Assembly (NCBI RefSeq): GCF_006345805.1 | Contig: NC_043011.1 | Span: 61,392,464-61,456,463 of the forward strand | Reading direction: 5' to 3' | DNA from: Octopus sinensis | Taxonomy: Eukaryota | DNA length: 64,000 nucleotides | The notes under the pieces: generated by a model | Told to the model about the DNA's origin: nothing | Seen by the model: only the letters and a program-made list of their open reading frames with translations | Database searches by the model: none | Made by a program: the position numbers and the translations under genes | Shown here: positions 1,722 through 59,050 of the stretch, piece after piece | Layout of the letters: every line of letters begins with the position of its first letter | Numbering within the stretch: the first letter of the stretch is position 1

Positions 1722-2210
1722 AATTGTTTTAGATGATTATGTTCCGGGTTCAGTCCCACTGCGTGGCACCTTGGGCAAGTGTCTTCTGCCATAGCCTCGG
1801 GCCGACCAATGCCTTGTGAATGGATTTGGTAGACGGAAACTGAAAGAAGCTTGTCGTATATATGCATATATATATATATGTATGTGTGTGTATATGTGTG
1901 TGTCTGTCTTTGTCCCCCTAGCATTGCTTGACAACCGATGCTGGTGTGTTTACGTCCCCGTCACTTAGCGGTTCGGCAAAAGAGACCGATAGAATAAGTA
2001 CTGGGCTTACAAAGAATAAGTCCCGAGGTCGATTTGCTCGACTAAAGGCGGTGCTCCAGCATGACCGCAGTCAAATGACTGAAACAAGTAAAAGAGACCG
2101 ATAGAATAAGTACTGGGCTTACAAAGAATAAGTCTCGGGGTCGATTTGCTCGACTAAAGGCGGTGCTCCAGCATGGCCGCAGTCAAATGACTGAAACAAG
2201 TAAAAGAGTA
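1722..2210 (+). mobile_element. SINE family C, near full length, with tandem duplication of about 118 bp of the 3' tail
   Basis: GTTCCGGGTTCAGTCCCACTGCGTGGCACCTTGGGCAAGTGTCTTC head, internal (TA)/(TG) tract, and the AAGAGACCGATAGAATAAGTACTGGGCTTACAAAGAATAAGTC...GAAACAAGTAAAAGAG tail present twice. Confidence 0.9.
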
Positions 2211-6992: not shown

Positions 6993-7104
6993 AAGACAAA
7001 TACAAACAAGAAATCATACTACATAACAAATATGAAGAAGAAGAAGAAGAAGAAGAAGAAGAAGAAGAAGAAGAAGAAGAAGAAGAAGAAGAAGAAGAAG
7101 AAGA
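6840..7104. repeat. (AAT)n-(AAC)n-(AAT)n-(AAG)n trinucleotide array
   Basis: Direct read. Confidence 0.95.
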
Positions 7105-8043
7105 AAACAACAAAAGCTATAAAGCAAATGAAATCAAAACTAAAACTAGAACAGCAACGGACCATGATAAAACGATGGCAAGAAAAGCCCCTTCATGGCA
7201 AGTACTGGACTAAACTAAATGCAAAAGAAATAGACAAAGAAAAATCCCAGCAATGGTTGAGAAGCTCAGGACTCAAAGCAGAAACAGAGGGATTTTTGAT
7301 TGCAGCACAAGACCAAAGCCTCCCCACCAGAAATTACCAAAAACATGTAATGAAAAGAAATATAACAAGTAACTGCAGAATATGTGAAGATGGACAAGAA
7401 ACAATAAATCATATTATCTCTGGCGGCCCAGTCCTGGCTAAGAAGGAATATATTCACAGACATGACAGAGTTGGAACCTACATACACTGGAAGCTATGCC
7501 AACATTATGGAATAACAACAGAAAAAAGATGGTATAGGCACACACCTATAAAGGTCACAGAAAACGAGAAAGCAACCATATTCTGGGATATGCCAATACA
7601 CACAGATAGAAAAATTAAGGCCAACAGACCACATATAGTTGTCAGAGATCATGAAGAAAAATAATGCTTTCTAATTGATGTATCAATACCAGCAGATGGC
7701 AACGTGTCTCTAAAAGAAATGGAGAAACTTTCAAAACACAAAGACCTGGAAATAGAGGTAACTAGAATGTGGAATCTAAAAACAGAAACAATTCCTATTA
7801 TAGTAGGTGCATTAGGCATGATAAAAAAATATTCAGACAAATACATAACAAAAACACCAGGACTTACAAACACATATAACATACAGAAAATTACACTACT
7901 AGGCACTGCACACATCCTACGCAGAACACTTTCCATACAATAACCATCAGAGCATCACAAAAAAATCACAGCACATACCCAAGGCACACAGAGCTGCGCT
8001 CGGTAGTGAAGTGAAAGCACGCTATAAAAATAAAACTACTGAA
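7105..8043 (+). mobile_element. 5'-truncated non-LTR retrotransposon with restriction-like endonuclease (R4/Dong-type); zinc knuckle, RLE and 3'UTR
   Basis: ORFs 7032-7664 and 7704-7943: KPLHGKYW, KAETEGFLIAAQDQSLPTRNY, CRICEDGQETINHIISGG (CCHC, last C mutated), RHDRVGTYIHWKLC, IFWDMPIHTDRKIKANRPHIV (PD mutated to PH), LIDVSIP..KEMEKLSK, IPIIVGALG. One in-frame stop at 7662-7664. Ends in (AAT)n. Confidence 0.9.
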
Positions 8044-17974: not shown

Positions 17975-18190
17975 AATGGGATTTGAACTCAGAGCATAAA
18001 GAACCTGAACAAATACGGCAGGATAACCAGTCTGGCGTTCTTGCAATTCCATCAATTCACCGCCCTCTATCGACGGCCCAAAATATGAAAAGGCCTAGTT
18101 GACCTTTGCGGGATTTGAACTCAGAGCGCAAAGAGCCAGAACAAATAATGAGGAATTTTATTTGACACTTTAATGACTCTGCCAGTGAGC
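17975..18190 (-). mobile_element. Two SINE family B head fragments
   Basis: GGGATTTGAACTCAGAGC occurs at about 17979 and about 18110. Confidence 0.65.
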
Positions 18191-18765
18191 TGCGATGCTC
18201 ACTTCATTGTTTGTAATGAGTTACCCATGCATCACTGCCAGATGCTTCAATCCCAGCACTGACACTGACAAATGTGATGTATAATCGGCCTTTATTTGAT
18301 GCAGATTGCTATTCTAGGAGCTGAGGAGATTTTTAGTTAAATTCTTCCAGAAATAAGGATGGCTGCAGCAGTCTTCCATTATTAACATAGGCTGGAAAAA
18401 ATTCTGCGTTTTGATCTCTTGTGGTTTATCTGTTCCACTAATATGAGAGATCGAATTTGTCTCTGCACATGTCCTACAAAATCTCATACACTTGCGAGCA
18501 CCATGCTAATTGACTGTTGCGGTCTGACGCGAGAGGAATTCTTTTTTATATTTAATTACTTTATATAAGGATTGTATTGGAATTTTTTCTCTTATATCAA
18601 CTCAATACCAAAAGAAGGAAACATTTAACATGTCTGAAAAAAAATTAAAGAATAATTTAGGCAACATGCATTGGTTATCATTCTGAACCATTTTCGCTGC
18701 GATGGAATGATGTATTTCAATATGCAATATATATATATATATATGTGTTTGTGTGTGTGCATCTG

Positions 18766-18840
<75 letters not shown>

Positions 18841-18841
18841 T

Positions 18842-19300
18842 ACATTAGAGATAAAACCACTATTAGGCAAATCAAACAGTGAAAAACATAAACCAAAACA
18901 TAGAAATAAAATTAATTAATATAATATAGAAAATATATAAAATATGAAATCCAAAATTTAAATTGTTTAAATTTAAAGTTGAAATTTTTAAAAATGTTTA
19001 AATTATTAATTTATACTTATGAATTTTTATATATATATTATATATATATATATATATTATTGTTTTTATTTTTATTTTATTTTATTTTTTATCTTTTCAT
19101 TTTTTTAATTATATATTTATTCAACTAATTAATTTTTTAAAAATATACATAGCTATCAAAAAGTATGAAAAAGTGTAATATAGGATAAAAAGTAAAACCA
19201 CTACAATCGTTTCATGCCCAAAACCTAATTCGAATAATTTAAATTCAATTAATAATTCGAATTACGGTTATAGTCAATTTTCAGGTTAATGATAATATTT
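18842..19300 (-). mobile_element. PLE-type terminal repeat (left arm) with degenerate HHR
   Basis: Reverse complement matches 23375-23635 and 47040-47290. HHR-like CTGAAAA (19284-19278) .. GAAAC GATT GTA (19213-19202). Confidence 0.6.
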
Positions 19301-19415
19301 AAATAAATAATCAAATATATTTTAACAATATTTATTTTTTATAAGAAATAAATAAAATAATAATTTTTCTTATGAAGAACTGTATTATAAAACTAGAAAC
19401 TTTAACGATTATGAT

Positions 19416-19671
19416 TATGTCATACAATCGATTTTAATGTTAAATATTAATTTTTAAGTATTAAGTTTTAAGGTAAGAAACCCACAATAATCTAATCTCA
19501 GTTATAGTCAATATCTAATTAACAAAAAAAAAAAATAATATTAATATATTTTTTTGTTAAATATTTAGGTAATTAGATATTGACTATAACTGAGATTAGA
19601 TTATTGTGGGTTACCTTAAAAATTAATACTTAAAAATTTATATTTAACATTATAATCGATTGTATGACATA
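19416..19671. repeat. Inverted repeat, arms about 105 bp, 48-bp AT-rich loop
   Basis: TATGTCATACAATCGATT..ATATCTAATTA (19416-19521) versus TAATTAGATAT..AATCGATTGTATGACATA (19570-19671). Confidence 0.9.
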
Positions 19672-22600
19672 GAGGGGGATTGTATGACAAAGAGGGGGAC
19701 TTGAGAGGTGAAAGGGAAGTAGGAGAGGAAGGAATGTTGAACATACAAGAGGGAGATTTGAGAGGAGAAGGGGGAAGAAGGAGAGGAAGGAATGTTGAAC
19801 ATAACAGAGGGGGATTTGAGAGGGGAAGGGGACGAAAGGGAGGAAGGAATGTTAAACATTCCAGAGGGGGGATTTGAAACGGGAGGGAGAGGAAGGGGAT
19901 GAAGGAATGTTAAACATTCCAGAGAGGGCTACTTGAGAGTGAGAGAGAGGATGGGGAGGAAAGAATGCTGAAAACTCCAGAGAGGGGGATTTGAGAAGGG
20001 AGAGGGAGGAAAGGAATGAAGGAACGTGAAACAATGAAGAGAGGGGGATTTAAGAGGGGAAGGAAAGGAAGGGGAAGGAAGAGTCCTGAACATTCCAGAG
20101 AGGATGAATTAAGAGAGGAAGGGGATGAAGTGGAGGAAAGATTGCTGAACATTCCAGAGAGGGGGATTTGAGAGGGGAAGGGATGGAAGGGTACTAAAAA
20201 TTTTGAAAATTCCAGGGACGGGAGATTTGAGAAGTGAAGGGTTGGAAGGGGCGGAATGAATGCTGAAAATTCCAAAGAGGTGAAGGGGAGGAAAAGGAGG
20301 AAAGAATGATGAACATTCCAGAGAGGGGGATTCGAGATTTGAAGGGGAGGAAGCGGAGGAAGGAATGTTAAACATTCCAGAGAGGGCGTTTTGAGAGTTG
20401 AAGGAGAGGATGGGGAGGAAAGAATGATAAACATTCCAGAGAGGGGGATTTGAGAGTGGAAGGGGAGGAAGGGAGGAAAGAATTCTACACATTCCAGAGA
20501 GGAGGATTTGACAGTGGAAGGGGAGGAAGGGGTGGAAGGGGAGGAAAGAATGCTAAACATTCCAGAGAGGGGGATTTGAGAGTGGAAGGGGAGGAAGGGG
20601 AGGAAAGAATGTTAAACATTCCAGAGAGAGGGATTTGAGAGGTGAAGGGGAAGAAGGGGAGGAAGGAATGTTAAACATTCCGGAGAGGAGGATTTGAGAG
20701 TTGAAGGGGAGGAAGGGAGGAAAGAATGTTATACATTCCAGAGAGGGGGATTTGAGAGTGAAAAGGGAGGATGGGGAGGAAAGAATGCTAAACATTCCAG
20801 AGAGGAGGATTTAACAGTTGAAGGGGAGGGAAAATGATGAACATTCCAGAGAGGGGCATTTGAGACTTGAAAGGGAGGAAGTGGAGGAAAGAATGCTAAA
20901 CATTCCAGAGAGGGGGATTTGAGAGTGGAAGGGGAGGAAGGGGAGGACATAATGTTAAACATTCCAGAGAGGGGGATTTGAGAGTTGAAGGGGAGGAAGG
21001 GGAGGAAAGAATGTTAAACATTCCAGAGTGGAGGATTTAACAGTTGAAGGGGAGGAAGGGGAGGAAAGAATGCTAAACATTCCAGAGAGGAGGATTTAAC
21101 AGTTAAAGGGGAGGAAAGGGAGGAAGGAATGCAAAACATTCCAGAGAGGGGGAATTGAGAGTTGAAGGGGAGGAAGGGGGAGGAAAGAATGCTAAACATT
21201 CCAGAGAGGGGGATTTGAGAGTGGAAGGGGAGGAAGGGGAGGAAAGAATGTTAAACATTCCAGAGAGGAGGATTTGAGAGTTGAAGGGGAGGAAGGGGAG
21301 GAAAGAATGTTAAACATTCCAGAGAGGGGGATTTGAGAGTTGAAGGGGAGGAAGGGGAGGAAAGAATGTTAAACATTCCAGAGGGGAGGATTTAACAGTT
21401 GAAGGGGAGGAAGGGGAGGAAAGAATGCTAAACATTCCAGAGAGGAGGATTTAACAGTTCAAGGGGAGGAAGGGGAGGAAGGAATGCAAAATATTCCAGA
21501 GAGGGGGAATTGAGAGTTGAAGGGGGGAAGGGGAGGAAAGAATGCTAAACATTCCAGAGAGGGGGATTTGAGAGTTGAAGGGGAGGAAGGGGAGGAAGGA
21601 ATGTTAAACATTCCAGAGAGGGGGATTTGAGAGTTGAAGGGGAGGAAGGAAGGGGAGGAAAGAATGTTAAACATTCCAGAAGGGAGGATTTAACAGTTGA
21701 AGGGGAGGAAGGAATGTTAAACATTCCAGAGAGGGTTATTTGAGAGTTGAAGGGGAGGAAGGGGAGGAAGGAATGTTAAACATTCCAGAGGGGAGGATTT
21801 AACAGTTGAAGGGGAGGAATGGGAGGAAAGAATCTTAAACATTCCAGAGGGGAGGAAGGGGAATCTTAAACATTCCAGTTGAAGGGGAGGAAGGGGAGGA
21901 AAGAATGCTAAACATTCCATAGAGGCAGATTTAACAGTTGAAGGGGAAGAAGGTGAGGAAAGAATGCTAAACATTCCAGAGAGGGGGATTTGAGAGTGGA
22001 AGGGGAGGAAGGGGAGTAAAAATGATGATCATTCCAGGGAGGGGCATTTGAGAGTTGAAGTGTAGGAAGGGGAGGAAAGAATGCAAAACATTCCAGAGAG
22101 GGGGATTTGAGAGTGGAAGGGCAGGAAGAGGAGGAAAGAATGCTAAAAATTCCAGAGAGGGGGATTTGAGCGTGGAAGGGGAGGAAGAGTTGGAAAGAAT
22201 GCTAAACATTCCAGAGACGGCGATTTGAGATTGGAAGGTGAGGAATGGGAGGAAATAATGTTAAACATTCCAGAGAGGGGGATTTGAGAGTTGAAGGGCA
22301 GGAAGGGGAGGAAAGAATGCTATACATTCCAGAGAGGAGGATTTAACAGTTGAAGGGGGAGGAAGATGAAGAATGAATGCTAAACATTCCAGACAGCGGG
22401 ATTTGAGAGTGGAAGGGGAGGAAGGGGAGGAAAAATGATGAACATTCCAGAGAGGGTCATTTGAGAGTTGAAGAGGAGGAAGTGGAGGAAAGAATGCTAA
22501 ACAATCCAGAGAGGGGGATTTGAGAGTGGAAGGGGAGAAAGGGGAGGAAAGAATGCTAAACATTCCAGAGAGGGGGATTTGAGAGTGAAAAGGGAGGAAG

Positions 22601-23369
22601 GGGAGGAAAGAATGCTAAACATTCCAGAGAGGAGGATTTAACAGTTGAAGGGGAGGAAGGGGAGGGAAAATGATGAACATTCCAGGGAGGGGCATTTGAG
22701 ACTTGAAAGGGAGGAAGTGGAGGAAAGAATGCTAGACATTCCAGAGAGGAGGATTTGAGAGTGGAAGGGGAGGAAATAATGTTAAACATTCCAGAGAGGG
22801 GGATTTGAGAGTTGAAGGGGAGGAAGGGGAGGAAGGAATGTTAAACATTCCAGAGTGGGGATTTGAGAGTTGAAGGGGAGGAAGGGGAGGAAAGAATGTT
22901 AAACATTCCAGAGAGGAGGATTTAACAGTTGAAGGGGAGGAAGGGGAGGAAAGAATGCTAAACATTCCAGAGAGGGGGATTTGAGAGTGAAAAGGGAGGA
23001 AGGGGAGGAAAGAATGCTAAACATTCCAGAGAGAGGGATTTGAGTGTTGAAGGGGAGGAACGGGTGGAAAGAATGCTAAACATTCCAGAGAGGGGGGTTT
23101 AGAAGGGAATGGGAGGAAGGTGGGGAAATTATGATGAACATTCAAGTGACGGGGATTTGAGATGTGAAGGGGAGAAAGAGGAGGAAGGAATGTTAAATAT
23201 TCCCGAGAGGGGAATTTGAGAGTTGAAGGGGAGGAAGGGGAGGAAGGAATTCTAAACATTCCAGATAGGGGGATTTAACAGTTGAAGGGGAGGAAGGGTA
23301 AGAAGGACTGTTAAACATTCCAGAGAGGGCGATTTGAGAGTTGAAGGGGAGGAAAGAATGTTAAACATT
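19672..23369 (+). repeat. Purine-rich minisatellite, about 59-bp unit, roughly 60 copies
   Basis: Consensus AAAGAATGTTAAACATTCCAGAGAGGGGGATTTGAGAGTTGAAGGGGAGGAAGGGGAGG; the register shifts by 1 base per 60-bp line at 21241-21421. Confidence 0.95.
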
Positions 23370-23725
23370 TAGTTTATTAATTAAATAAATATATAATAGA
23401 AAACAATTTTTTTTAATAATAGTAAAAATAAATATAATATATATCTATAAAAATTTATAAGAATAAATTAATAATTTTAAATTAAAAAAAAACTTTAACT
23501 TTAAATTTAAATAATTTATTTTGAATTTTATATTTTATATGTTTTGCATATTATATTAATTAATTTTATTTCTATATTTTGCTTTATGTTTTTCACTGTT
23601 TGATTTGCCTAATAGTGGTTTTATCTCTAATTTAATATATATATTTATACTGTAAAATTAGATTTAATCCTAAATCTAACATTTTCCTGTTAGTTTTGAT
23701 TTACTCCCTAATATTGTTATTATAT
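23370..23725 (+). mobile_element. PLE-type terminal repeat tail (right arm)
   Basis: TTTTTCACTGTTTGATTTGCCTAATAGTGGTTTTATCTCTAAT..GATTTAATCCTAAATC; inverted copy of 18842-19140 and related to 47160-47350. Confidence 0.65.
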
Positions 23726-23733
23726 ATATTTAT

Positions 23734-23764
<31 letters not shown>

Positions 23765-24884
23765 CTTCTGGAAAGAATATTCTTAAAATGAAAGTGTTCG
23801 CTCTGTTGCTGTTGGCGACCAAGCAGCGCTGTATTCAGCAGACCTACTTAATTCTTTGAACATCAGTCACATGTCAGTTCACATTACCAATGCGGACGCT
23901 AGTAAATCTTGACCACAGAAACCAGCCATTTCAGCAATATATGCTATAGACATTTATCTGCAAATGACACTGACAAATGCAAGTAAAATAACTGGTTTTG
24001 ACGTCGGGCGTGTTTTTCTAATTCTCTAATTCTCCGTATCAACCTGAAGTTATCAGATATAGATTTCTCATTTAATTTAAAACATCCTTTTTCTGTCAAA
24101 CCCGCATTTGCCGCGGAATGCTATTAACCGAAAGCTCTGAGCAAATCTCATTAAAATCTGACATTAACCTCCTTACAACATTGCTCACAAATAATCATAC
24201 GCGTTGCTCTCTGTAGACTTTGGAGGTGATTTTCGCCTGTGTAATTAGGCTTAATTACAAGACGTTAGGAATCTTCCTATGTAGGAAATGGAGAATGTAC
24301 AAAAAATGTCGCGTATTCAAAAGATGGTTTGAATTTGCAAATTTTGCGTTAGTAGAACAGTGTGTTGTCTGGAGAAATATAATACGGTAAAATATATTTC
24401 GTTTTATTAATATTTCGGTTTGTTAAACGACTATTACATTTTCAGTCTGCGTTAATTTTCTTCTTTTGTTCTATCTTTAAAGTTTTCCTCTATTTCGATG
24501 AACATATATTTTTACTGTTTTAATTAAGACAGCAAACGTGTACATGTATATAAATGCATACATACTCATAGCAGACATATGCGTGTATGTGTATAAAACA
24601 TATATGTTATATAATATGAAAATGCAATATTTATAATTATATATTAAAGCGTTAAGCTTGTATCTTATTTATCAAACCCTGTTGGTCTTGAAATTTTATT
24701 CTGTTTCCTTTCTCTATATATGTTTCTATGTGAGTTAGAGGAATAGAAACCGACTAAGGGATAGTACCTATCCAATATAATGCTGGTAGCGTATCCAGTT
24801 ATTCATAACCAAGTGCTAGTTATTGCATGGCAATCTCGCAATTGAGTATTGTATATTGGAGGGGGTAAAATTCGTTTACCCTTG

Positions 24885-26596: not shown

Positions 26597-27049
26597 ATAT
26601 ATTATATACATATATAATTCATAAATGAGGGCAAAGGAAAAAAATCTAATGCCAAATATGCCGAAAAATTGGACATATTGTCCATTAACCATATAATTTT
26701 TTCACAATACACACGCTACTCGAAAAAAGGTCGACAGAAATTTCTAAAAAATTCCATTATTACCATATCGGACCGATTTCAGAGTTAGCTACTAAGAGCC
26801 CTCTCTTCGTCAGTGATACATGTGGCAAAAGAAATAAATGAGATACTTACTCATACCCATAAGTATCTCATTTATCTATTTTGCCACATGTATCACTGAC
26901 GAAGAGGGGGTTCTCTGAAATCGGTCCGATATGGTAATAATGGAATTTTTTAGAAATTTCTGTCGACCTTTTTTCGAGTAGCGTGCGTATTGTGAAAAAA
27001 TTATATGGTTAATGGAAAATATGTCCAATTTTTCGGCATTTATGAATTG
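26597..27049. mobile_element. Large fold-back of PLE-type termini with two opposed HHR motifs
   Basis: 26658-26849 versus 26860-27039, 10-nt loop. HHR on + at 26891-26931 and on - at 26766-26819. Confidence 0.8.
26891..26931 (+). ncRNA. Minimal type-I hammerhead ribozyme motif (predicted)
   Basis: TATCA CTGACGA AGAG ggggtt CTCT GAAA TCG GTC CGATA. Core intact; helix II 4 bp; helix I 4 bp with a closing mismatch. Confidence 0.55.
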
Positions 27050-37410: not shown

Positions 37411-37824
37411 TATGTCTTTATTGCCCAGAAAGGGCTAAACATAGAGGGTCAAAGAAGGACAGACAAAGGGATTAAGTCGATTGCATCGACCCCAGTGCGT
37501 AACTGGTACTTAATTTATCGACCACGAAAGAATGAAAGGCAAAGTCGACCTCGGTGGAATTTGAACTCAGAACGTAACGGCAGACGAAATACCTATTTCT
37601 TTACTACCCACAAGGGGCTAAACACAGAGAGGACAAACAACGACAGACAAACGGATTAAGTCGATTATATCGACCCCAGTGCGTAACTGATACTTATTTA
37701 ATTGACCCCGGAAGAATGAAAGGCAAAGTCGACCTCGGCGGAATTTAAACTCAGAACGTAACGGCATACGAAATACCGCTAAGTATTTCGCCCGGCGTGC
37801 TAACGTTTCTGGTAGCTCGTCGCC
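37411..37824 (-). mobile_element. Dimeric SINE family B insertion with 15-bp TSD
   Basis: TTCTGTGCAGATTCT at 37396-37410 and 37825-37839 flanks two tandem, non-identical units. Confidence 0.85.
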
Positions 37825-43812: not shown

Positions 43813-44907
43813 TAAACTTAGATAAACTTAGATATGTTTCGACCAGAGATTGGTCCAGGCCATGTCTAACTTAATAGCACCACCTGATAGGATTATTCGA
43901 ATCCTGTTTAAGTCAAGTTTTGTTCAAGTAGTGAGTTCTTGTTGGCTGAGTTGTATCCAGTTTTGTTCAGTAGTGAGTTCTTGTTGGTGAGTTGTATCCA
44001 ATTATGGGTGGCTTGTCTGGTATTCTTTGAAGGAATCTATCCAGACTCTGTTTGAAGTTGATGGGATCCTTTTCTCTTTGATCTCCCTCGGGACAATGTT
44101 AAATAGGGCAGGGCCTGTTGAGGAAAAGAATTATGTTGCAGTGTACATGTATGTTGTGATCTTGAATTTGGCAGGGGACGTATAGCCGTGGTCCAAGTCT
44201 CGGATGAACCTTGAAACTAATGTTTAGGTCGTTTGGGCAAAGTTGGCGGTATATTTTCCACATCGTACAAATGATGTACCGCTCACGGCGACGCTGGAGG
44301 GAGTAAAGTTTCAAGGCTTTAAGGCGATCCCAATAGTCGAGAGCAGCCATGCCTTCAATTTGTTTAGTGAGAGCCCTCTGGGGTGACTCAATTCTGGAGA
44401 TGTTTTGTCTTGTGTGAGGAGACCACAGTGGGCAGCGGTATTCAAGGTGTGGCCGTACAAAGGATGAAAAAAGTGGTATGATGACACCTTGTTCTCTGGA
44501 CCGGAAAGTTCTTAAGATCCAGGAACTCATCCTACGAGCTGTATCAACCTTCTTGTTGATGTGTGCACTCCGACTGAGATCGTCATCAACAATTACACCC
44601 AGGTCTCTGATATTGTTAGAGGCTGTGAGCGGTTCCCCTGAAGGAAGAGAGTATGGTTGTTTTAGTGAGGAATTTCTTCCAAAATGCATCAGCTCAAATT
44701 TTCCCTCATTCAGTTGCATTTTGTTTCTGTCTGCCCATTGACTCACAGCATATAGGTCAGACTGGAGTTGAGTTCGGTCTGCTTCTTCATTGACGATTTG
44801 CTGGAGCTTAGTGTCATCAGCGAATATTTTCACTTTGCAGTGATGTACGACACTGGAAAGGTCGTTTACATAAATTATGAAGAGTAGCGGACCTAAAACA
44901 GTCCCCT
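43813..44907 (-). mobile_element. 5'-truncated CR1/L2-group LINE: RT C-terminal half, 3'UTR and tandem tail
   Basis: Open frame QGTVLGPLLFIIYVNDL..KIFADDTKL..FVRPHLEYRCPLWSPH..LYSLQRRRERY. The minus-strand 3' end has the hairpin GACC-AATCTCT-GGTC and a (TCTAAGTTTA)2 tail. Confidence 0.9.
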
Positions 44908-45690: not shown

Positions 45691-46035
45691 TCGATGAATT
45701 GAGGTACGAGTGTATACGTGTGTGTGACACAATTTTCTGGGATACACTGAATGTTCATTAACCAAATACAGAAGTAAGCGAAGGACAATTCAAATCAACA
45801 GATATTCAACATACTTAATATTTGGTAATTTAAAAACCGCAACACATCAAATTAAGTGGAAATTTTGAGAGAAAAAGCAAACTTGCCCTGTATCAATTAA
45901 ATCTGAAATGTATACGTTATGCAGGCCGGAGACGGTTGTTATATACTATTCTACGAAAGCATCATGTACTTGAAGAACTGCCAGCAATATATTTGAACGG
46001 GCTAACATTTCATATAATATTTGTTGCAGTTCAAG

Positions 46036-46249
46036 GCGGCCAGCTGGCAAAAACGTTAGGACGCCGGGCGAAATGCTTAGCGCTATTTTCGTCTGCCGTT
46101 ACGTTCTGAGTTCAAATTCCGCCGAGGTCGACTTTGTCTTTCATTCTTTCGGGATCGATGAATCAAGTATCCCTTGCATACTGAGGTCGATCTCATCAAC
46201 CGGCCCCCTTTCCCCAAAATTTCGGGCCTTGTACCTAGAGTAGAAAAGA
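46036..46249 (+). mobile_element. SINE family B, full length, with degenerate 19-bp TSD
   Basis: ATATTTGTTGCAGTTCAAG (46017-46035) versus ATATTTGCTGAAGTTCAAG (46250-46268), 17/19 identical. Confidence 0.9.
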
Positions 46250-46451
46250 ATATTTGCTGAAGTTCAAGCATCCTAACAAATTCACTTGAATAATTACTTA
46301 TCTTATATCTTCATTAGCTCTTAATTATCTTTAACCGAGTAAAAAGCAATTTTAAGTTCGTATATATTTAATTATTAACAATATATATATTTTTAGCTTG
46401 GTATAGCTTCGACAAATCTTTGGTTGAAACATATCTACGTTGTCTAATATA

Positions 46452-46993
46452 CGAGGATGAGTCAAAATGTAATGCCATTTTGTTTAGAACAAGTATAACT
46501 ACCAACACAGGAACATGTATCATACATCAAAATGAAGCGGGTCCTCTGTGGATCGCATCCCTACTTTTCAACATAGTCACCGTTTCTCTCAATAGCAATG
46601 TTCCACCTTCGAATAAGCGCATGTATCCCTGCCCTGTAAAGTTCTTCACTGCAGTTTTCACTTCCTCGTTACTGGGCTATCATCGCCACTGGACAATCAT
46701 CTCTTCGGCCCCATGAAAGAGGGTTTGAGAGGCAAACATTATTCTAGTGACGAGGAAGTAAAGAACTGTAGTGAAAAAGTGGCTCAAAGAACAGTCAACA
46801 TAATTTAACGTGGCAGGGATACACGTTCTCATTTGAAGGTGGAGCATTGCTATTGAGGGAAACGGTGATTATGCTGAGAAGTAAGGATGTGTTTCACAGA
46901 GGACCAGCTTCATTTTGATGTATGATACATGTTCCTGTGTTGGTAATTATACCTGTCCTAAACAAAGTGGCATTACTTTTTGACTCACCCTCG
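46452..46993. mobile_element. Mariner-derived element built from two opposed 3' ends, TA TSD
   Basis: TA|CGAGGATGAGTCAAAA .. TTTTTGACTCACCCTCG|TA. The interior gives LDNHLFGPMKEGLRGKHYSSDEEVK; the left arm is an inverted copy of the transposase C-terminus plus TIR. Confidence 0.85.
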
Positions 46994-47039
46994 TAAATAT
47001 AAATAAATAAATATATCTATATATATACATAAAAAGATA

Positions 47040-47350
47040 AATATTTCAATTAACCTGAAGATTGACTGTAACCATAACTCGAATTAATACGAATTGTACA
47101 GCCATGAAACGATCGTAGTGTTTTACTCTTTATCTTTTATTAAACTTTTAATACTTTTGATATATTTTAAAAATAATATAAATTAATTAATTTTATGTAT
47201 TGGCTTATATTTTTCATTGTTTGATTTGCCTAAGAGTGGTTTTATCTCTAATTTAATATAATATAATATAATATATTTTACTATAAAATTGGATTTAATC
47301 CTAAATCTGATTTTTCTCTGTAAGTTTGGATTTATTCCCTAATATTTTAT
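47040..47350 (+). mobile_element. PLE-type terminal repeat with HHR motif
   Basis: CTGAAGA (47055) T TGACTGTA..TACAGCCA T GAAAC GATC GTA (47117), followed by the tail shared with 18842 and 23540. Confidence 0.65.
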
Positions 47351-47819
47351 TATATATATATATATACATACAAATATATACATGTATGTATGTGTGTATG
47401 TTTGTACGCATGCATGTGTGAATACAAACACGTATCTTTTCTATGTGGCTTTGCGCATTAATGTAGTATATCTGCCGAAATATTCATACGGGGCGAAAAA
47501 TTGTTAGTATAGTATGTATGTGTATATGTAGACACATACATAGAATATATAAATATATATGTGTGTATTTATGCCTATATACATACACACACACACATGT
47601 AAGTAGATGTGCGTGTGTGCGTGTGTGTGCGAGTGTGTATGCGTGTGAGTGTGTAAACACTAGAAATTAAATAGTTTTGCTAGTGTAACTTTATATATAA
47701 TGGAGATGTTGTAGGAAGCAGTGCAATGTTTTTAAATATTTAAACAAGAAATAGTATTCCCACTTGATTTCAAAAACCATGTGATTTAAATGTGTGATAT
47801 TTATATATTTATATAACAG

Positions 47820-58148: not shown

Positions 58149-59050
58149 CGAAGTCTGATCAATAAGTATCCGGCCTGTTACTACAGTAACAGAACTATAA
58201 CACGTACCAATTTGGCATTTAATCTCCTTCAGTGTACGAAGCCACACACTTAATCCAGCACTGTTTCCATCGATGGAAGCATTCCTGGAACTCGTTTTCT
58301 GGGAGAATCAGCAGCTGCCTCGTCTCATTCAGTTTGATTTCCTCAGCGAACTGAAATCCTCCTTTCAAGCAGGATTTCATTTTTGCAAAAAGGGAAAAGT
58401 CGCAGGGAGTGGGATCTGGGGAATAAGGTGGTTATCGAATCCGAACAATGCTGTGTGTAGCCAAAAACTACAGCACAAACTGCGCTGAATGGACAAGTGC
58501 GTTGTCATTGTGCAACTGCCACTCACCGGACTCGTGCAGTTGTGGCCTTTTCCGAGGAACAACATCCCACAAACGCCGCGAAACATCACGGAAGTAATCC
58601 TTGTTTACTGTCTGTCCAGGTGGAGCGTACTCATAATGAACAATCCCCGTGTAGTCGAAGAAAACGGTCACATTGTTTCGACTTATTCGTGCTTTCTTCG
58701 GTCACGGAGAAGTTGGGCTCTTCCAGTGTGAAGACTGAGCCATTGACCCACGATTCATCACCCATTATAACCGTTTTCAAAAAGTTTTCATCGTTCTGGA
58801 CACAATTAAGGAGATCTTGTGCAGCATTTTGGTCTGTTGAAAGTTGTTTCGGCACAAACTTGGCAGACATGCATCCTATAAGGCAAACTTCAGCGATAAT
58901 GGACTGATCAGAACCGCAACTAATCTGCACATCCTCTGACAACTCAGGGTTGGTGATTCGACGATTTTCCTTCATAGCTGCAAGCACATCTGCAATGTTT
59001 TTCTTAGTTCTGCTGGTTGCGATCTCCTAGAACGCTCGTCACTATCGCGG
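58149..59050 (-). mobile_element. Mariner (DD34D) pseudo-transposase with 3' TIR, 5'-truncated
   Basis: TA|CGAAGTCTGATCAATAAGTATCCGG TIR. Motifs VIMGDESWV, HNDNALVH and PPYSPDPTPCDF, with 34 residues counted between the 2nd and 3rd Asp. Stops and frameshifts present. Confidence 0.9.

What the first reader, a model, noticed from the sequence alone, without database searches (positions are those of the whole stretch)
18842..23725. Composite of about 4.9 kb: inverted PLE-type arms enclosing a hairpin and a G-rich minisatellite
Seen: 18842-19140 is an inverted copy of 23375-23635. Both arms have CCTAATAGTGG where the 47.2-kb relative has CCTAAGAGTGG, and both contain an AT-rich stretch of about 200 bp that the relative lacks. 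The left arm continues into an HHR-like motif. Very AT-rich arms switch abruptly to a 78%-purine (consensus unit) array. Established: PLE insertions often carry an inverted terminal repeat at the 5' end. Inference: this is one PLE-derived or foldback-like unit that captured or incubated a satellite, potentially a vehicle for satellite dispersal.
Basis: partly seen in the sequence, partly recalled or inferred. Interest (0 to 1): 0.7.

Follow-up and report, generated by a model that had tools for sequence, protein, structure and literature searches.

The report
Satellite array flanked by inverted repeats
A 3.7-kb block of a 59-base purine-rich tandem repeat and a 256-base foldback lie between two inverted copies of a small AT-rich mobile-element relic inside a (TA)n microsatellite of an animal genome. 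The layout is real and resembles a Penelope-type retroelement insertion, but nothing shows that the whole unit moves or spreads the repeat.

Summary
The structure is real. Two inverted arms (18826-19061 and 23415-23649) are 87% identical over about 237 bp, and 97% in the 74-column 3' core. They enclose a 256-bp foldback (19416-19671) and 64 monomers of a 59-bp, 77%-purine repeat (19691-23368).

The arms belong to a dispersed AT-rich family with a third copy at 47038-47355. They lie head-to-head with 3' ends outward. The left copy is the fuller one and the right copy is 5'-truncated. Both outer ends abut (TA)n.

This matches published Penelope-like (PLE) insertion architecture, but none of it is decisive:
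- No hammerhead ribozyme is found by Rfam, only a loose motif that is mutated in the left copy.
- No PLE ORF is present.
- About 4 kb separates the two 5' ends.
- Only the right arm carries the family's last ~90 bp, so the inverted-repeat ends are not element ends.

The monomer resembles nothing else in the window, and no second array was found in any searchable collection. Decayed edge monomers and a homogenised centre indicate growth in place.

Verdict: observation confirmed, PLE-type origin plausible, "vehicle for satellite dispersal" untested. It is a new instance of the known association between mobile elements and satellites. Interest is modest.

The parts
18727..18840 (.). Left flanking (AT)n microsatellite, about 57 units, abutting the 3' end of the left arm
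   Evidence: TRF; sequence
18842..18944 (-). Left copy, 3' core ('tail') of the family. It contains CCTAATAGTGGTTTTATCTCTAAT and ends in the (AT)n tract without the ~90-bp 3' extension
   Evidence: nhmmer 18845-18944, E 6e-23
18945..19153 (-). Left copy, AT-rich segment (209 bp) absent from the 47-kb copy
   Evidence: blastn breakpoints; alignment
19154..19304 (-). Left copy, 5' 'head'. It is homologous to 47038-47161 and carries the degenerate hammerhead-like motif CTGAAAA...GAAACGATTGTA
   Evidence: nhmmer E 1.8e-42; 71% identity to the 47-kb copy; no Rfam hit
19305..19415 (.). AT-rich spacer (87% A+T) of unassigned origin. Weak low-complexity similarity to the 47-kb copy's upstream flank reaches about 19343
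19416..19671 (.). 256-bp foldback. Arms are 19416-19527 and 19564-19671 (95-96% complementary) with a 36-nt loop
   Evidence: The sub-threshold MIR2599 match (41 bits against a gathering score of 120) reflects only the hairpin shape
19658..19699 (+). 20-bp tandem duplication (x2.1) spanning the junction between foldback and array
   Evidence: TRF; sequence
19691..23368 (+). 59-bp purine-rich satellite of 64 monomers. The last monomer is cut at 45 nt. Edge monomers are decayed, the centre is homogenised, and there are multi-monomer block duplications
23369..23530 (+). Right copy, AT-rich segment, 5'-truncated. Solid homology to the left arm starts at 23415
23531..23631 (+). Right copy, 3' core of the family with CCTAATAGTGGTTTTATCTCTAAT
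   Evidence: nhmmer E 4.7e-23
23632..23720 (+). Right copy, ~90-bp 3' extension shared with 47253-47355 and absent from the left arm
23721..23764 (.). Right flanking (TA)n microsatellite, about 22 units
   Evidence: TRF
47038..47355 (+). Third, solo family copy (head, core and extension, without the AT-rich segment). It is followed by (TA)n and preceded by a mariner-derived foldback MITE

Best explanation
Two sister copies of a short, AT-rich, non-coding retroelement-like repeat sit head-to-head, with 3' ends outward, inside a single (TA)n microsatellite. The left copy is the fuller one. The right copy is inverted and 5'-truncated.

The most likely history is a Penelope-type insertion. In that mechanism both strands of the cut target are extended by reverse transcription, which yields an inverted pair with an optional 3' 'tail' at one end. 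Unrelated filler would have been trapped where the two 5' ends were joined: a foldback, and a seed of the 59-bp purine-rich repeat.

The 59-bp repeat then grew in place to 64 monomers by unequal exchange and slippage.

Shown here: the anatomy, the sister relationship of the arms, the 5' truncation, the asymmetric 3' extension, the (TA)n on both sides, and the decayed-edge, homogenised-centre profile of the array.

Inferred: the PLE-type enzyme, the single insertion event, and the capture of filler at the junction.

I see the composite as a structural by-product with no demonstrated function or mobility as a unit.
For: - Arms: 87% identity over 237 columns, E 1.6e-79. In the core, L=R but not rel at 8 sites, L=rel but not R at 2, R=rel but not L at 0, of 74 columns.
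- Inverted homology is limited to family sequence and the outer flanks are unrelated.
- The left copy has the head (nhmmer E 1.8e-42). The right copy lacks it and starts inside the AT-rich segment.
- The 3' extension is present only on the right arm and the solo copy.
- (TA)n lies on both outer sides of the composite and after the solo copy.
- Published PLE traits (PMC8557442): an inverted 5'-truncated copy at the 5' end, an optional tail at one end, and (TA)n as the preferred target of Naiad PLEs, which lack canonical HHRs and abound in invertebrates.
- A purified PLE protein cleaves and extends both DNA strands and starts reverse transcription at two internal sites, which explains the optional tail (PMC11167929).
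- Array profile: the first 11 monomers are 71-86% identical to the consensus, the centre 88-98%, the last five 73-95%. Blocks 24-26 = 30-32 and 19-21 = 51-53 are duplicated.
- The foldback arms (95-96%) and the arm cores (93-97%) are similarly diverged.
Against: - No hammerhead is detected by covariance models at E <= 10 in any copy. The head RNA does not fold better than shuffles (z 0.21 and -1.95).
- No RT or GIY-YIG ORF lies in the composite, and none was seen among window ORFs of 70 aa or more.
- In PLEs the inverted copy is described as immediately adjacent. Here the 5' ends are about 4 kb apart.
- The optional extension is ~90 bp, not 30-40 bp. It is bracketed by (TA) runs, so a simple deletion also explains its absence on the left.
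- Only one outgroup copy is available, so two independent insertions from one subfamily cannot be excluded.
- The origin of the monomer is unknown.
Confidence: 0.4

Rival explanations
1. Two independent insertions. The family is a SINE-like or 5'-truncated LINE-tail repeat whose partner targets or ends in (TA)n-type microsatellites. Two copies of one young subfamily landed, by chance in opposite orientation, on either side of a resident satellite and foldback.
For: - There are three family copies in 64 kb, so a second copy within 5 kb is not rare.
- Every copy, including the solo one, is followed by (TA)n, so (TA)n may be a property of the family.
- The 5' ends of the two arms are not adjacent.
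- The satellite and the foldback are unrelated to the arms.
- Foldbacks are common in this window: 26653-27044 and 46447-46998.
- From my own knowledge, unverified here: LINEs of the R4/Dong group insert into simple repeats.
Against: - Neither arm has (TA)n on its inner (5') side, while the composite as a whole has it on both sides.
- The arms are much closer to each other than to the third copy.
- The 3'-ends-out orientation is one of four possible arrangements.
Confidence: 0.3
2. The 4.9 kb is a single mobile composite, PLE-derived or foldback-like, that carries the satellite as cargo and can seed arrays elsewhere.
For: - The whole unit is bracketed by (TA)n.
- The arms are sister copies.
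- Carriage of satellites by mobile elements is known in molluscs: Helentron non-autonomous elements (PMC7492417, title and abstract).
- Some PLE families are lengthened by tandem repeats (PMC8557442).
Against: - There is no second array, solo monomer or second composite in the window. Nothing was found in the protein database or in the DNA collections, though those collections hold hardly any animal DNA.
- The inverted-repeat ends are not equivalent: the left arm lacks the ~90-bp terminus.
- Decayed edge monomers point to a long residence and growth in place.
Confidence: 0.12
3. The array is the 5' part of the left, fuller copy. A full-length family member would read, on the minus strand: tandem array, foldback, spacer, head, AT-rich segment, core. 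The right arm and the 47-kb copy would then be ordinary 5'-truncated copies, and the right arm would abut the left copy's 5' end directly, as in PLEs.
For: - It removes the 4-kb adjacency problem.
- Both other copies are 5'-truncated at different points.
- Retroelements with 5' tandem arrays exist, for example mouse L1 promoter monomers (my own knowledge), and some Chlamys PLE families contain tandem repeats.
Against: - Homology between the left copy and the 47-kb copy fades within about 40 bp upstream of the head. It does not resume beyond the mariner insertion (20 of 300 shuffles score as high).
- Nothing else ties the spacer, foldback or array to the family.
Confidence: 0.1
4. A DNA-level palindrome. 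Breakage and fold-back repair duplicated one resident family copy in inverted orientation, and the foldback at 19416-19671 marks the original axis. The satellite later replaced part of the right arm.
For: - The inverted repeats are nested (outer arms and inner foldback) and similarly diverged.
- There is weak similarity between the family head and the foldback arms: a shared 12-mer ATTGACTATAAC plus CGATTGTA (14 of 500 shuffles score as high).
Against: - The two axes are 1.7 kb apart.
- Outer homology ends at the family boundary rather than at arbitrary flanking DNA.
- The head-foldback similarity is marginal and was noticed post hoc.
- It needs an extra replacement event involving an unrelated satellite.
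Confidence: 0.08

Closest known systems
Penelope-like element (PLE) insertion units, especially (TA)n-targeting Naiad-type PLEs and their non-autonomous derivatives (PMC8557442; PMC11167929)
   Same: Head-to-head inverted pair with 3' ends outward; one copy 5'-truncated; an optional 3' extension at one end only; (TA)n on both sides; no canonical hammerhead; non-coding.
   Different: No RT or GIY-YIG ORF and no autonomous partner identified. The two 5' ends are about 4 kb apart rather than adjacent. The extension is ~90 bp, not 30-40 bp. There is no partial tandem (pLTR). The interior is an unrelated satellite plus a foldback.
Satellite-carrying non-autonomous elements of molluscs (Helentron-derived and tandem-repeat-containing MITE-like elements; PMC7492417)
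   Same: A short mobile-element framework flanks an internal tandem array, and the concept is of mobile elements dispersing satellite seeds.
   Different: From my own knowledge: those elements have directly oriented left and right modules, a few monomers of about 150-190 bp, and many dispersed copies. Here the arms are inverted copies of one sequence, the unit is 59 bp repeated 64 times, and only one locus is known.
SVA-type composite retrotransposons (an internal VNTR between retroelement-derived modules)
   Same: A G-rich minisatellite is embedded between retroelement-derived pieces, and the array length is free to vary in place.
   Different: SVA modules are collinear, end in poly(A), and are mobilised as one RNA with target-site duplications (my own knowledge). 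None of this is shown here.
Foldback (FB-type) transposons
   Same: Long terminal inverted repeats around a variable middle.
   Different: FB inverted repeats are themselves built of tandem subrepeats and have equivalent ends (my own knowledge). Here the arms are unique-sequence copies of a dispersed family, the ends are unequal, and the tandem repeat lies in the middle.
Non-LTR retrozymes (tandem 150-450-bp repeats carrying type I hammerheads; PMC7229834)
   Same: AT-rich, non-coding, about 300 bp. The 47-kb copy has a motif with a one-base-pair helix III capped by a palindromic GAUC loop and a U-U at the base of helix II. Both traits are described for weak animal hammerheads.
   Different: The copies are not in tandem, no hammerhead is found by Rfam, the left copy has A in place of the conserved G8, and helix I is poor.

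Membership tests
Penelope-like element (autonomous) | A single ORF encoding RT plus a GIY-YIG endonuclease | tested here: not met
   The only ORFs of 120 aa or more in 18842-23725 are two low-complexity readings of the satellite. The satellite ORF has no homologues. Pfam on 10 window ORFs found only RVT_1, zf-RVT and a mariner transposase, and no GIY-YIG.
PLE-type insertion unit (non-autonomous or truncated) | An inverted 5'-truncated copy next to the 5' end of a fuller copy, with 3' ends outward | tested here: inconclusive
   Orientation and truncation fit. The two 5' ends are about 4 kb apart rather than adjacent.
PLE-type insertion unit (non-autonomous or truncated) | An optional short 3' 'tail' (30-40 bp) present at one end only | tested here: inconclusive
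   A ~90-bp extension is present on the right arm and the solo copy and absent on the left arm. The length differs, and a deletion between the flanking (TA) runs is an equal explanation.
PLE-type insertion unit (non-autonomous or truncated) | Partial tandem copies forming pseudo-LTRs | tested here: not met
   No direct repeat of the family lies in or beside the composite. A possible repeat of the terminal motif about 99 bp apart is marginal (5 of 500 and 68 of 500 shuffles).
PLE-type insertion unit (Naiad-like) | Insertion bias for (TA)n microsatellites | tested here: inconclusive
   (TA)n lies on both outer sides of the composite and after the solo copy. With three copies I cannot separate a target preference from an element tail.
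PLE-type insertion unit (non-autonomous) | 3'-end sequence shared with an autonomous PLE of the same genome | not testable with these tools
   The source genome is not in any searchable collection.
Hammerhead ribozyme (type I, including minimal PLE variants) | Conserved core CUGANGA...GAAA, a UH cleavage site and helices I-III, scored by covariance model | tested here: not met
   No hammerhead family matches at gathering score or at E <= 10. The 47-kb copy matches a hand-made pattern (1 hit, 0.03 expected, designed post hoc). The left copy has CUGAAAA, with G8 changed to A. Folding z-scores are 0.21 and -1.95.
Non-LTR retrozyme | Head-to-tail tandem units of 150-450 bp, each with a type I hammerhead | tested here: not met
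   Family copies are solo or inverted, never tandem, and no hammerhead was detected.
Foldback (FB-type) transposon | Terminal inverted repeats built of tandem subrepeats, with equivalent ends | tested here: not met
   The arms are unique-sequence copies of a dispersed family. The right arm extends ~90 bp past the inverted repeat.
Satellite-carrying Helentron/MITE-like elements | Collinear left and right modules around a few monomers; many dispersed copies | tested here: not met
   The flanks are inverted copies of one sequence. There is a single locus in the window and none elsewhere. Genome-wide copy number could not be tested.
Satellite DNA (tandem array evolving by unequal exchange) | Head-to-tail monomers, a homogenised centre, degenerate edges and block duplications | tested here: met
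   There are 64 monomers. Identity to the consensus is 71-86% at the left edge and 88-98% in the centre, and multi-monomer blocks are duplicated.

The most novel reading that the evidence does not exclude
The composite is a mobile, non-autonomous PLE-derived inverted dimer that carries a 59-bp G-rich repeat in its interior and seeds arrays of it across the genome. That would be an invertebrate, PLE-driven counterpart of SVA-type or Helentron-type satellite carriers.
Probability: 0.12. Interest if true: 0.55.

Novelty: new member of a known kind. Interest (0 to 1): 0.3.

Why it matters
If other arrays of this repeat turn out to share the same arms, this would be a concrete case of a Penelope-type retroelement seeding satellite DNA. 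That route has been documented so far mainly for Helitron/Helentron elements, MITEs and SVA.

As it stands, it is one well-resolved example of how an inverted retroelement pair, a foldback and a tandem array can pile up inside a single microsatellite. It is useful for repeat annotation and as a caution for assemblers. It has no shown function and does not bear on a long-standing open question.

Tried and rejected
1. Rfam at gathering score on the whole window, and at E <= 10 on 18000-24500, 46950-47400 and 19120-19330. There was no hammerhead; the hits were hairpin- or microsatellite-driven sub-threshold miRNA matches.

2. Fetching other arrays through the protein databases. The 216-aa satellite ORF is not on record and has no homologue.

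3. Exact-pattern scans for the arm core and the monomer in metagenome contigs (twice), genome contigs (twice) and viral contigs (once). All returned zero.

4. Identifying the organism.
   - Three window ORFs are not on record.
   - The best RT relative is 72% identical, on an unnamed contig of GCA_024449705.1.
   - Literature searches for that accession, for SINE-like strings and for the repeat sequences found nothing.
   - My recollection that the SINE-like units are octopod is unverified and is not used as evidence.

5. Derivation of the monomer from the arms, foldback or 47-kb copy. Local alignments score no better than shuffles.

6. The idea that the foldback arms are diverged copies of the family head. 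Support is marginal: z about 2.2, with 14 of 500 shuffles as good, and 41 of 500 for the 47-kb head. I do not rely on it.

7. The idea that the right arm is cut exactly at the start of the AT-rich segment. I rejected this after a global alignment showed the first ~50 bp to be unalignable.

8. The idea that the 47-kb copy continues upstream of the mariner insertion into spacer or foldback homology. This is not supported.

9. G-quadruplex potential. There are no canonical G4 motifs with loops of 1-7 nt. There are 33 pure-purine tracts of 20 nt or more, against 10 in the rest of the window. Triplex-forming potential is therefore only an inference.

10. Helitron reading (5' TC, 3' CTRR plus a hairpin). 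The ends read CTAA|T, but no convincing 3' hairpin exists, and Helitrons do not make inverted pairs. I rejected this by inspection.


Full report
**What is there**

The region was read directly and analysed for repeats. From left to right it contains:
- an (AT)n tract, 18727-18840;
- a minus-strand copy of a short AT-rich repeat, 18842-19304;
- an AT-rich spacer, 19305-19415;
- a 256-bp foldback, 19416-19671;
- 64 head-to-tail monomers of a 59-bp purine-rich unit, 19691-23368;
- a plus-strand partial copy of the same AT-rich repeat, 23369-23720;
- a (TA)n tract, 23721-23764.

A third, solo copy of the repeat lies at 47038-47355 on the plus strand.

**Check of the observation**

The inverted arms are far beyond chance:
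- The ungapped core is 132 nt at 93%.
- Gapped blastn gives 87.3% over 237 columns, E 1.6e-79.
- The 24-mer around CCTAAKAGTGG occurs exactly three times in the window, with T in both arms and G at 47229. The expected count is 0.00.
- Both arms carry an AT-rich segment that the 47-kb copy lacks: 209 bp on the left and about 162 bp on the right, 75% identical over ungapped columns. The inner ~50 bp of the right one is not reliably alignable.

The array is called by TRF with period 59, 62.5 copies and score 4182. My segmentation gives 64 monomers, 3678 bp, 76.6% purine (consensus 78%), G 40% and C 7%. The arms are 87-88% A+T and the array 53%.

The foldback folds at -99 kcal/mol as single-stranded DNA, z = -22.9.

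**Anatomy of the family**

Aligning the three copies splits the family into four parts:
- a 5' head (19304-19154 on the minus strand; 47038-47161);
- the optional AT-rich segment;
- a 3' core of about 100 bp, present in all three copies (nhmmer E 1e-21 to 5e-23);
- a ~90-bp 3' extension, found only on the right arm (23632-23720) and the solo copy (47253-47355).

These assignments rest. Three consequences follow.

First, the arms are sister copies. Among 74 comparable core columns, 64 are invariant. In 8 the two arms agree against the solo copy, in 2 the left arm agrees with the solo copy, and in none does the right arm. That is 97% identity between the arms, against 86-89% to the third copy.

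Second, the right arm is 5'-truncated. It has no head and begins inside the AT-rich segment. The left arm is as complete as the solo copy at its 5' end.

Third, the ends of the inverted repeat are not the ends of the element. The right arm runs 90 bp further, and the left arm stops in a (TA) run. This excludes a classical transposon defined by terminal inverted repeats.

Inverted homology is confined to family sequence. The flanks beyond the two microsatellites show no similarity, inverted or direct. The arms are therefore element copies, not an arbitrary segmental inversion-duplication.

**The hammerhead claim**

Rfam finds no hammerhead at gathering score in the window. It also finds none at E <= 10 in 18000-24500, 46950-47400 or 19120-19330.

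By hand, the 47-kb copy reads CUGAAGA, then 43 nt, then GAAAC-GAUC-GUA. A pattern written after seeing it matches only there (1 hit, 0.03 expected).

[quoted passage not shown] Against that:
- helix I is poor;
- the head RNAs do not fold better than shuffles (z 0.21 and -1.95);
- the left-arm copy has CUGAAAA, which loses the conserved G8, and a non-palindromic GAUU loop.

At most this is a decayed relic. It cannot carry the classification.

**The array**

Identity to the consensus is 71-86% for the first eleven monomers, 88-98% through the centre and 73-95% for the last five. Several monomer pairs are identical, and blocks are duplicated (24-26 = 30-32; 19-21 = 51-53). There is no array-wide higher-order period. 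This is the usual signature of growth and homogenisation in place by unequal exchange, with old, stable boundaries.

The monomer has no significant similarity to the arms, the foldback or the solo copy. No solo monomer occurs elsewhere in the window.

A 20-bp tandem duplication (19658-19699) spans the junction between foldback and array.

The array has 33 pure-purine tracts of 20 nt or more and no canonical G-quadruplex motif.

**The foldback**

It is unique in the window. Its arms share a 12-mer and an 8-mer with the family head, but alignment scores are only marginally above shuffles (14 of 500).

Two other foldbacks lie in the same 64 kb, at 26653-27044 and 46447-46998. Finding one inside the composite is therefore not remarkable in itself.

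**Searches for relatives elsewhere**

- The 216-aa reading frame through the array is not on record and has no homologue among 5.8 billion proteins.
- Exact scans for the arm core and the monomer in the metagenome, prokaryotic-genome and viral collections gave nothing.
- Literature string searches gave nothing.
- The source genome is not in the collections, and the organism remains unidentified.

The window is a microsatellite-rich animal sequence with mariner, LINE-type RT and SINE-like fragments.

**Interpretation**

Several features together match the published description of PLE insertion units: a fuller copy plus an inverted 5'-truncated copy with 3' ends outward, an extension at one end only, (TA)n on both outer sides, and no canonical hammerhead.

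Craig et al. (PMC8557442) describe:
- inverted 5'-truncated copies at the 5' end;
- a tail often present at one end only;
- (TA)n as the preferred target of Naiads, which lack canonical hammerheads and abound in invertebrates;
- PLE families lengthened by tandem repeats.

Frangieh et al. (PMC11167929) show that a purified PLE protein cuts and extends both DNA strands. It starts reverse transcription at two internal sites, which explains the optional tail.

I therefore favour, at about 0.4, a PLE-type origin of the inverted pair, with foreign filler at the 5'-5' junction that later expanded. The fit is imperfect:
- the 5' ends are about 4 kb apart;
- the extension is about 90 bp;
- no pseudo-LTR is present;
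- no PLE protein is nearby;
- a deletion between (TA) runs explains the missing extension equally well.

The main rival (0.3) is two independent hits of a microsatellite-associated SINE or LINE-tail family around a resident satellite.

**Comparison with known systems, and verdict**

Associations between mobile elements and satellites are well documented. Examples are Helentron carriers in oysters (PMC7492417), tandem-repeat MITEs, the SVA VNTR and foldback elements. This locus fails the defining features of each of these and of retrozymes (see the membership table). It fits only the loose architecture of PLE insertions.

It is a new instance of a known kind of arrangement. The interesting part, dispersal of a satellite by a PLE-derived unit, is untested.

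Noticed in passing
window 46447-46998: Mariner-derived foldback MITE. It has 197-nt arms at 87% identity, the terminal sequence TACGAGGGTGAGTCAAAAAGTAATG at both ends, TA on both sides and a remnant of the transposase C-terminus. It sits directly 5' of the 47-kb family copy.
   Followed up: partly
window 26653-27044: A near-perfect foldback of about 390 bp (132-nt arms, 97% complementary, 128 nt between them, the middle also palindromic). It is unrelated in sequence to the 19416-19671 foldback.
   Followed up: partly
window 1978-2208 and 37411-37777: Tandem duplications of SINE-like sequence (112 bp x 2.1 at 97%; 184 bp x 2.0 at 88%). A related SINE-like stretch lies at about 46030-46200.
   Followed up: no
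window 44102-44905 (-): LINE-type reverse transcriptase fragment (Pfam RVT_1, 32 bits). The closest database protein is 72% identical, on a 934-bp contig of assembly GCA_024449705.1, whose organism I could not identify.
   Followed up: partly
window 58222-59026 (-): Frameshifted mariner transposase remnants (Pfam Transposase_1 on 58471-58701).
   Followed up: partly
window 7034-7661 (+): A (GAA)24 tract runs into an ORF that carries a zf-RVT match just below the Pfam cut-off (24.2 bits against 27.5), which suggests the C-terminal part of a non-LTR retrotransposon ORF.
   Followed up: partly
whole window: Very high microsatellite load: 118 TRF rows in 64 kb, including many (AT)n, (GATA)n/(TATC)n, (AAT)n, (AGA)n and (TG)n tracts. 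Many of the long 'inverted repeats' reported between 45 and 60 kb are simply complementary microsatellites.
   Followed up: no
window 23608-23647 vs 23707-23746: The family's 3' core terminus and the end of the ~90-bp extension share a motif (TTTGATTT..CCTAATAKTG..TAT + (TA)n) about 99 bp apart. This is marginally significant in the right arm (5 of 500 shuffles) and not significant in the 47-kb copy (68 of 500).
   Followed up: yes
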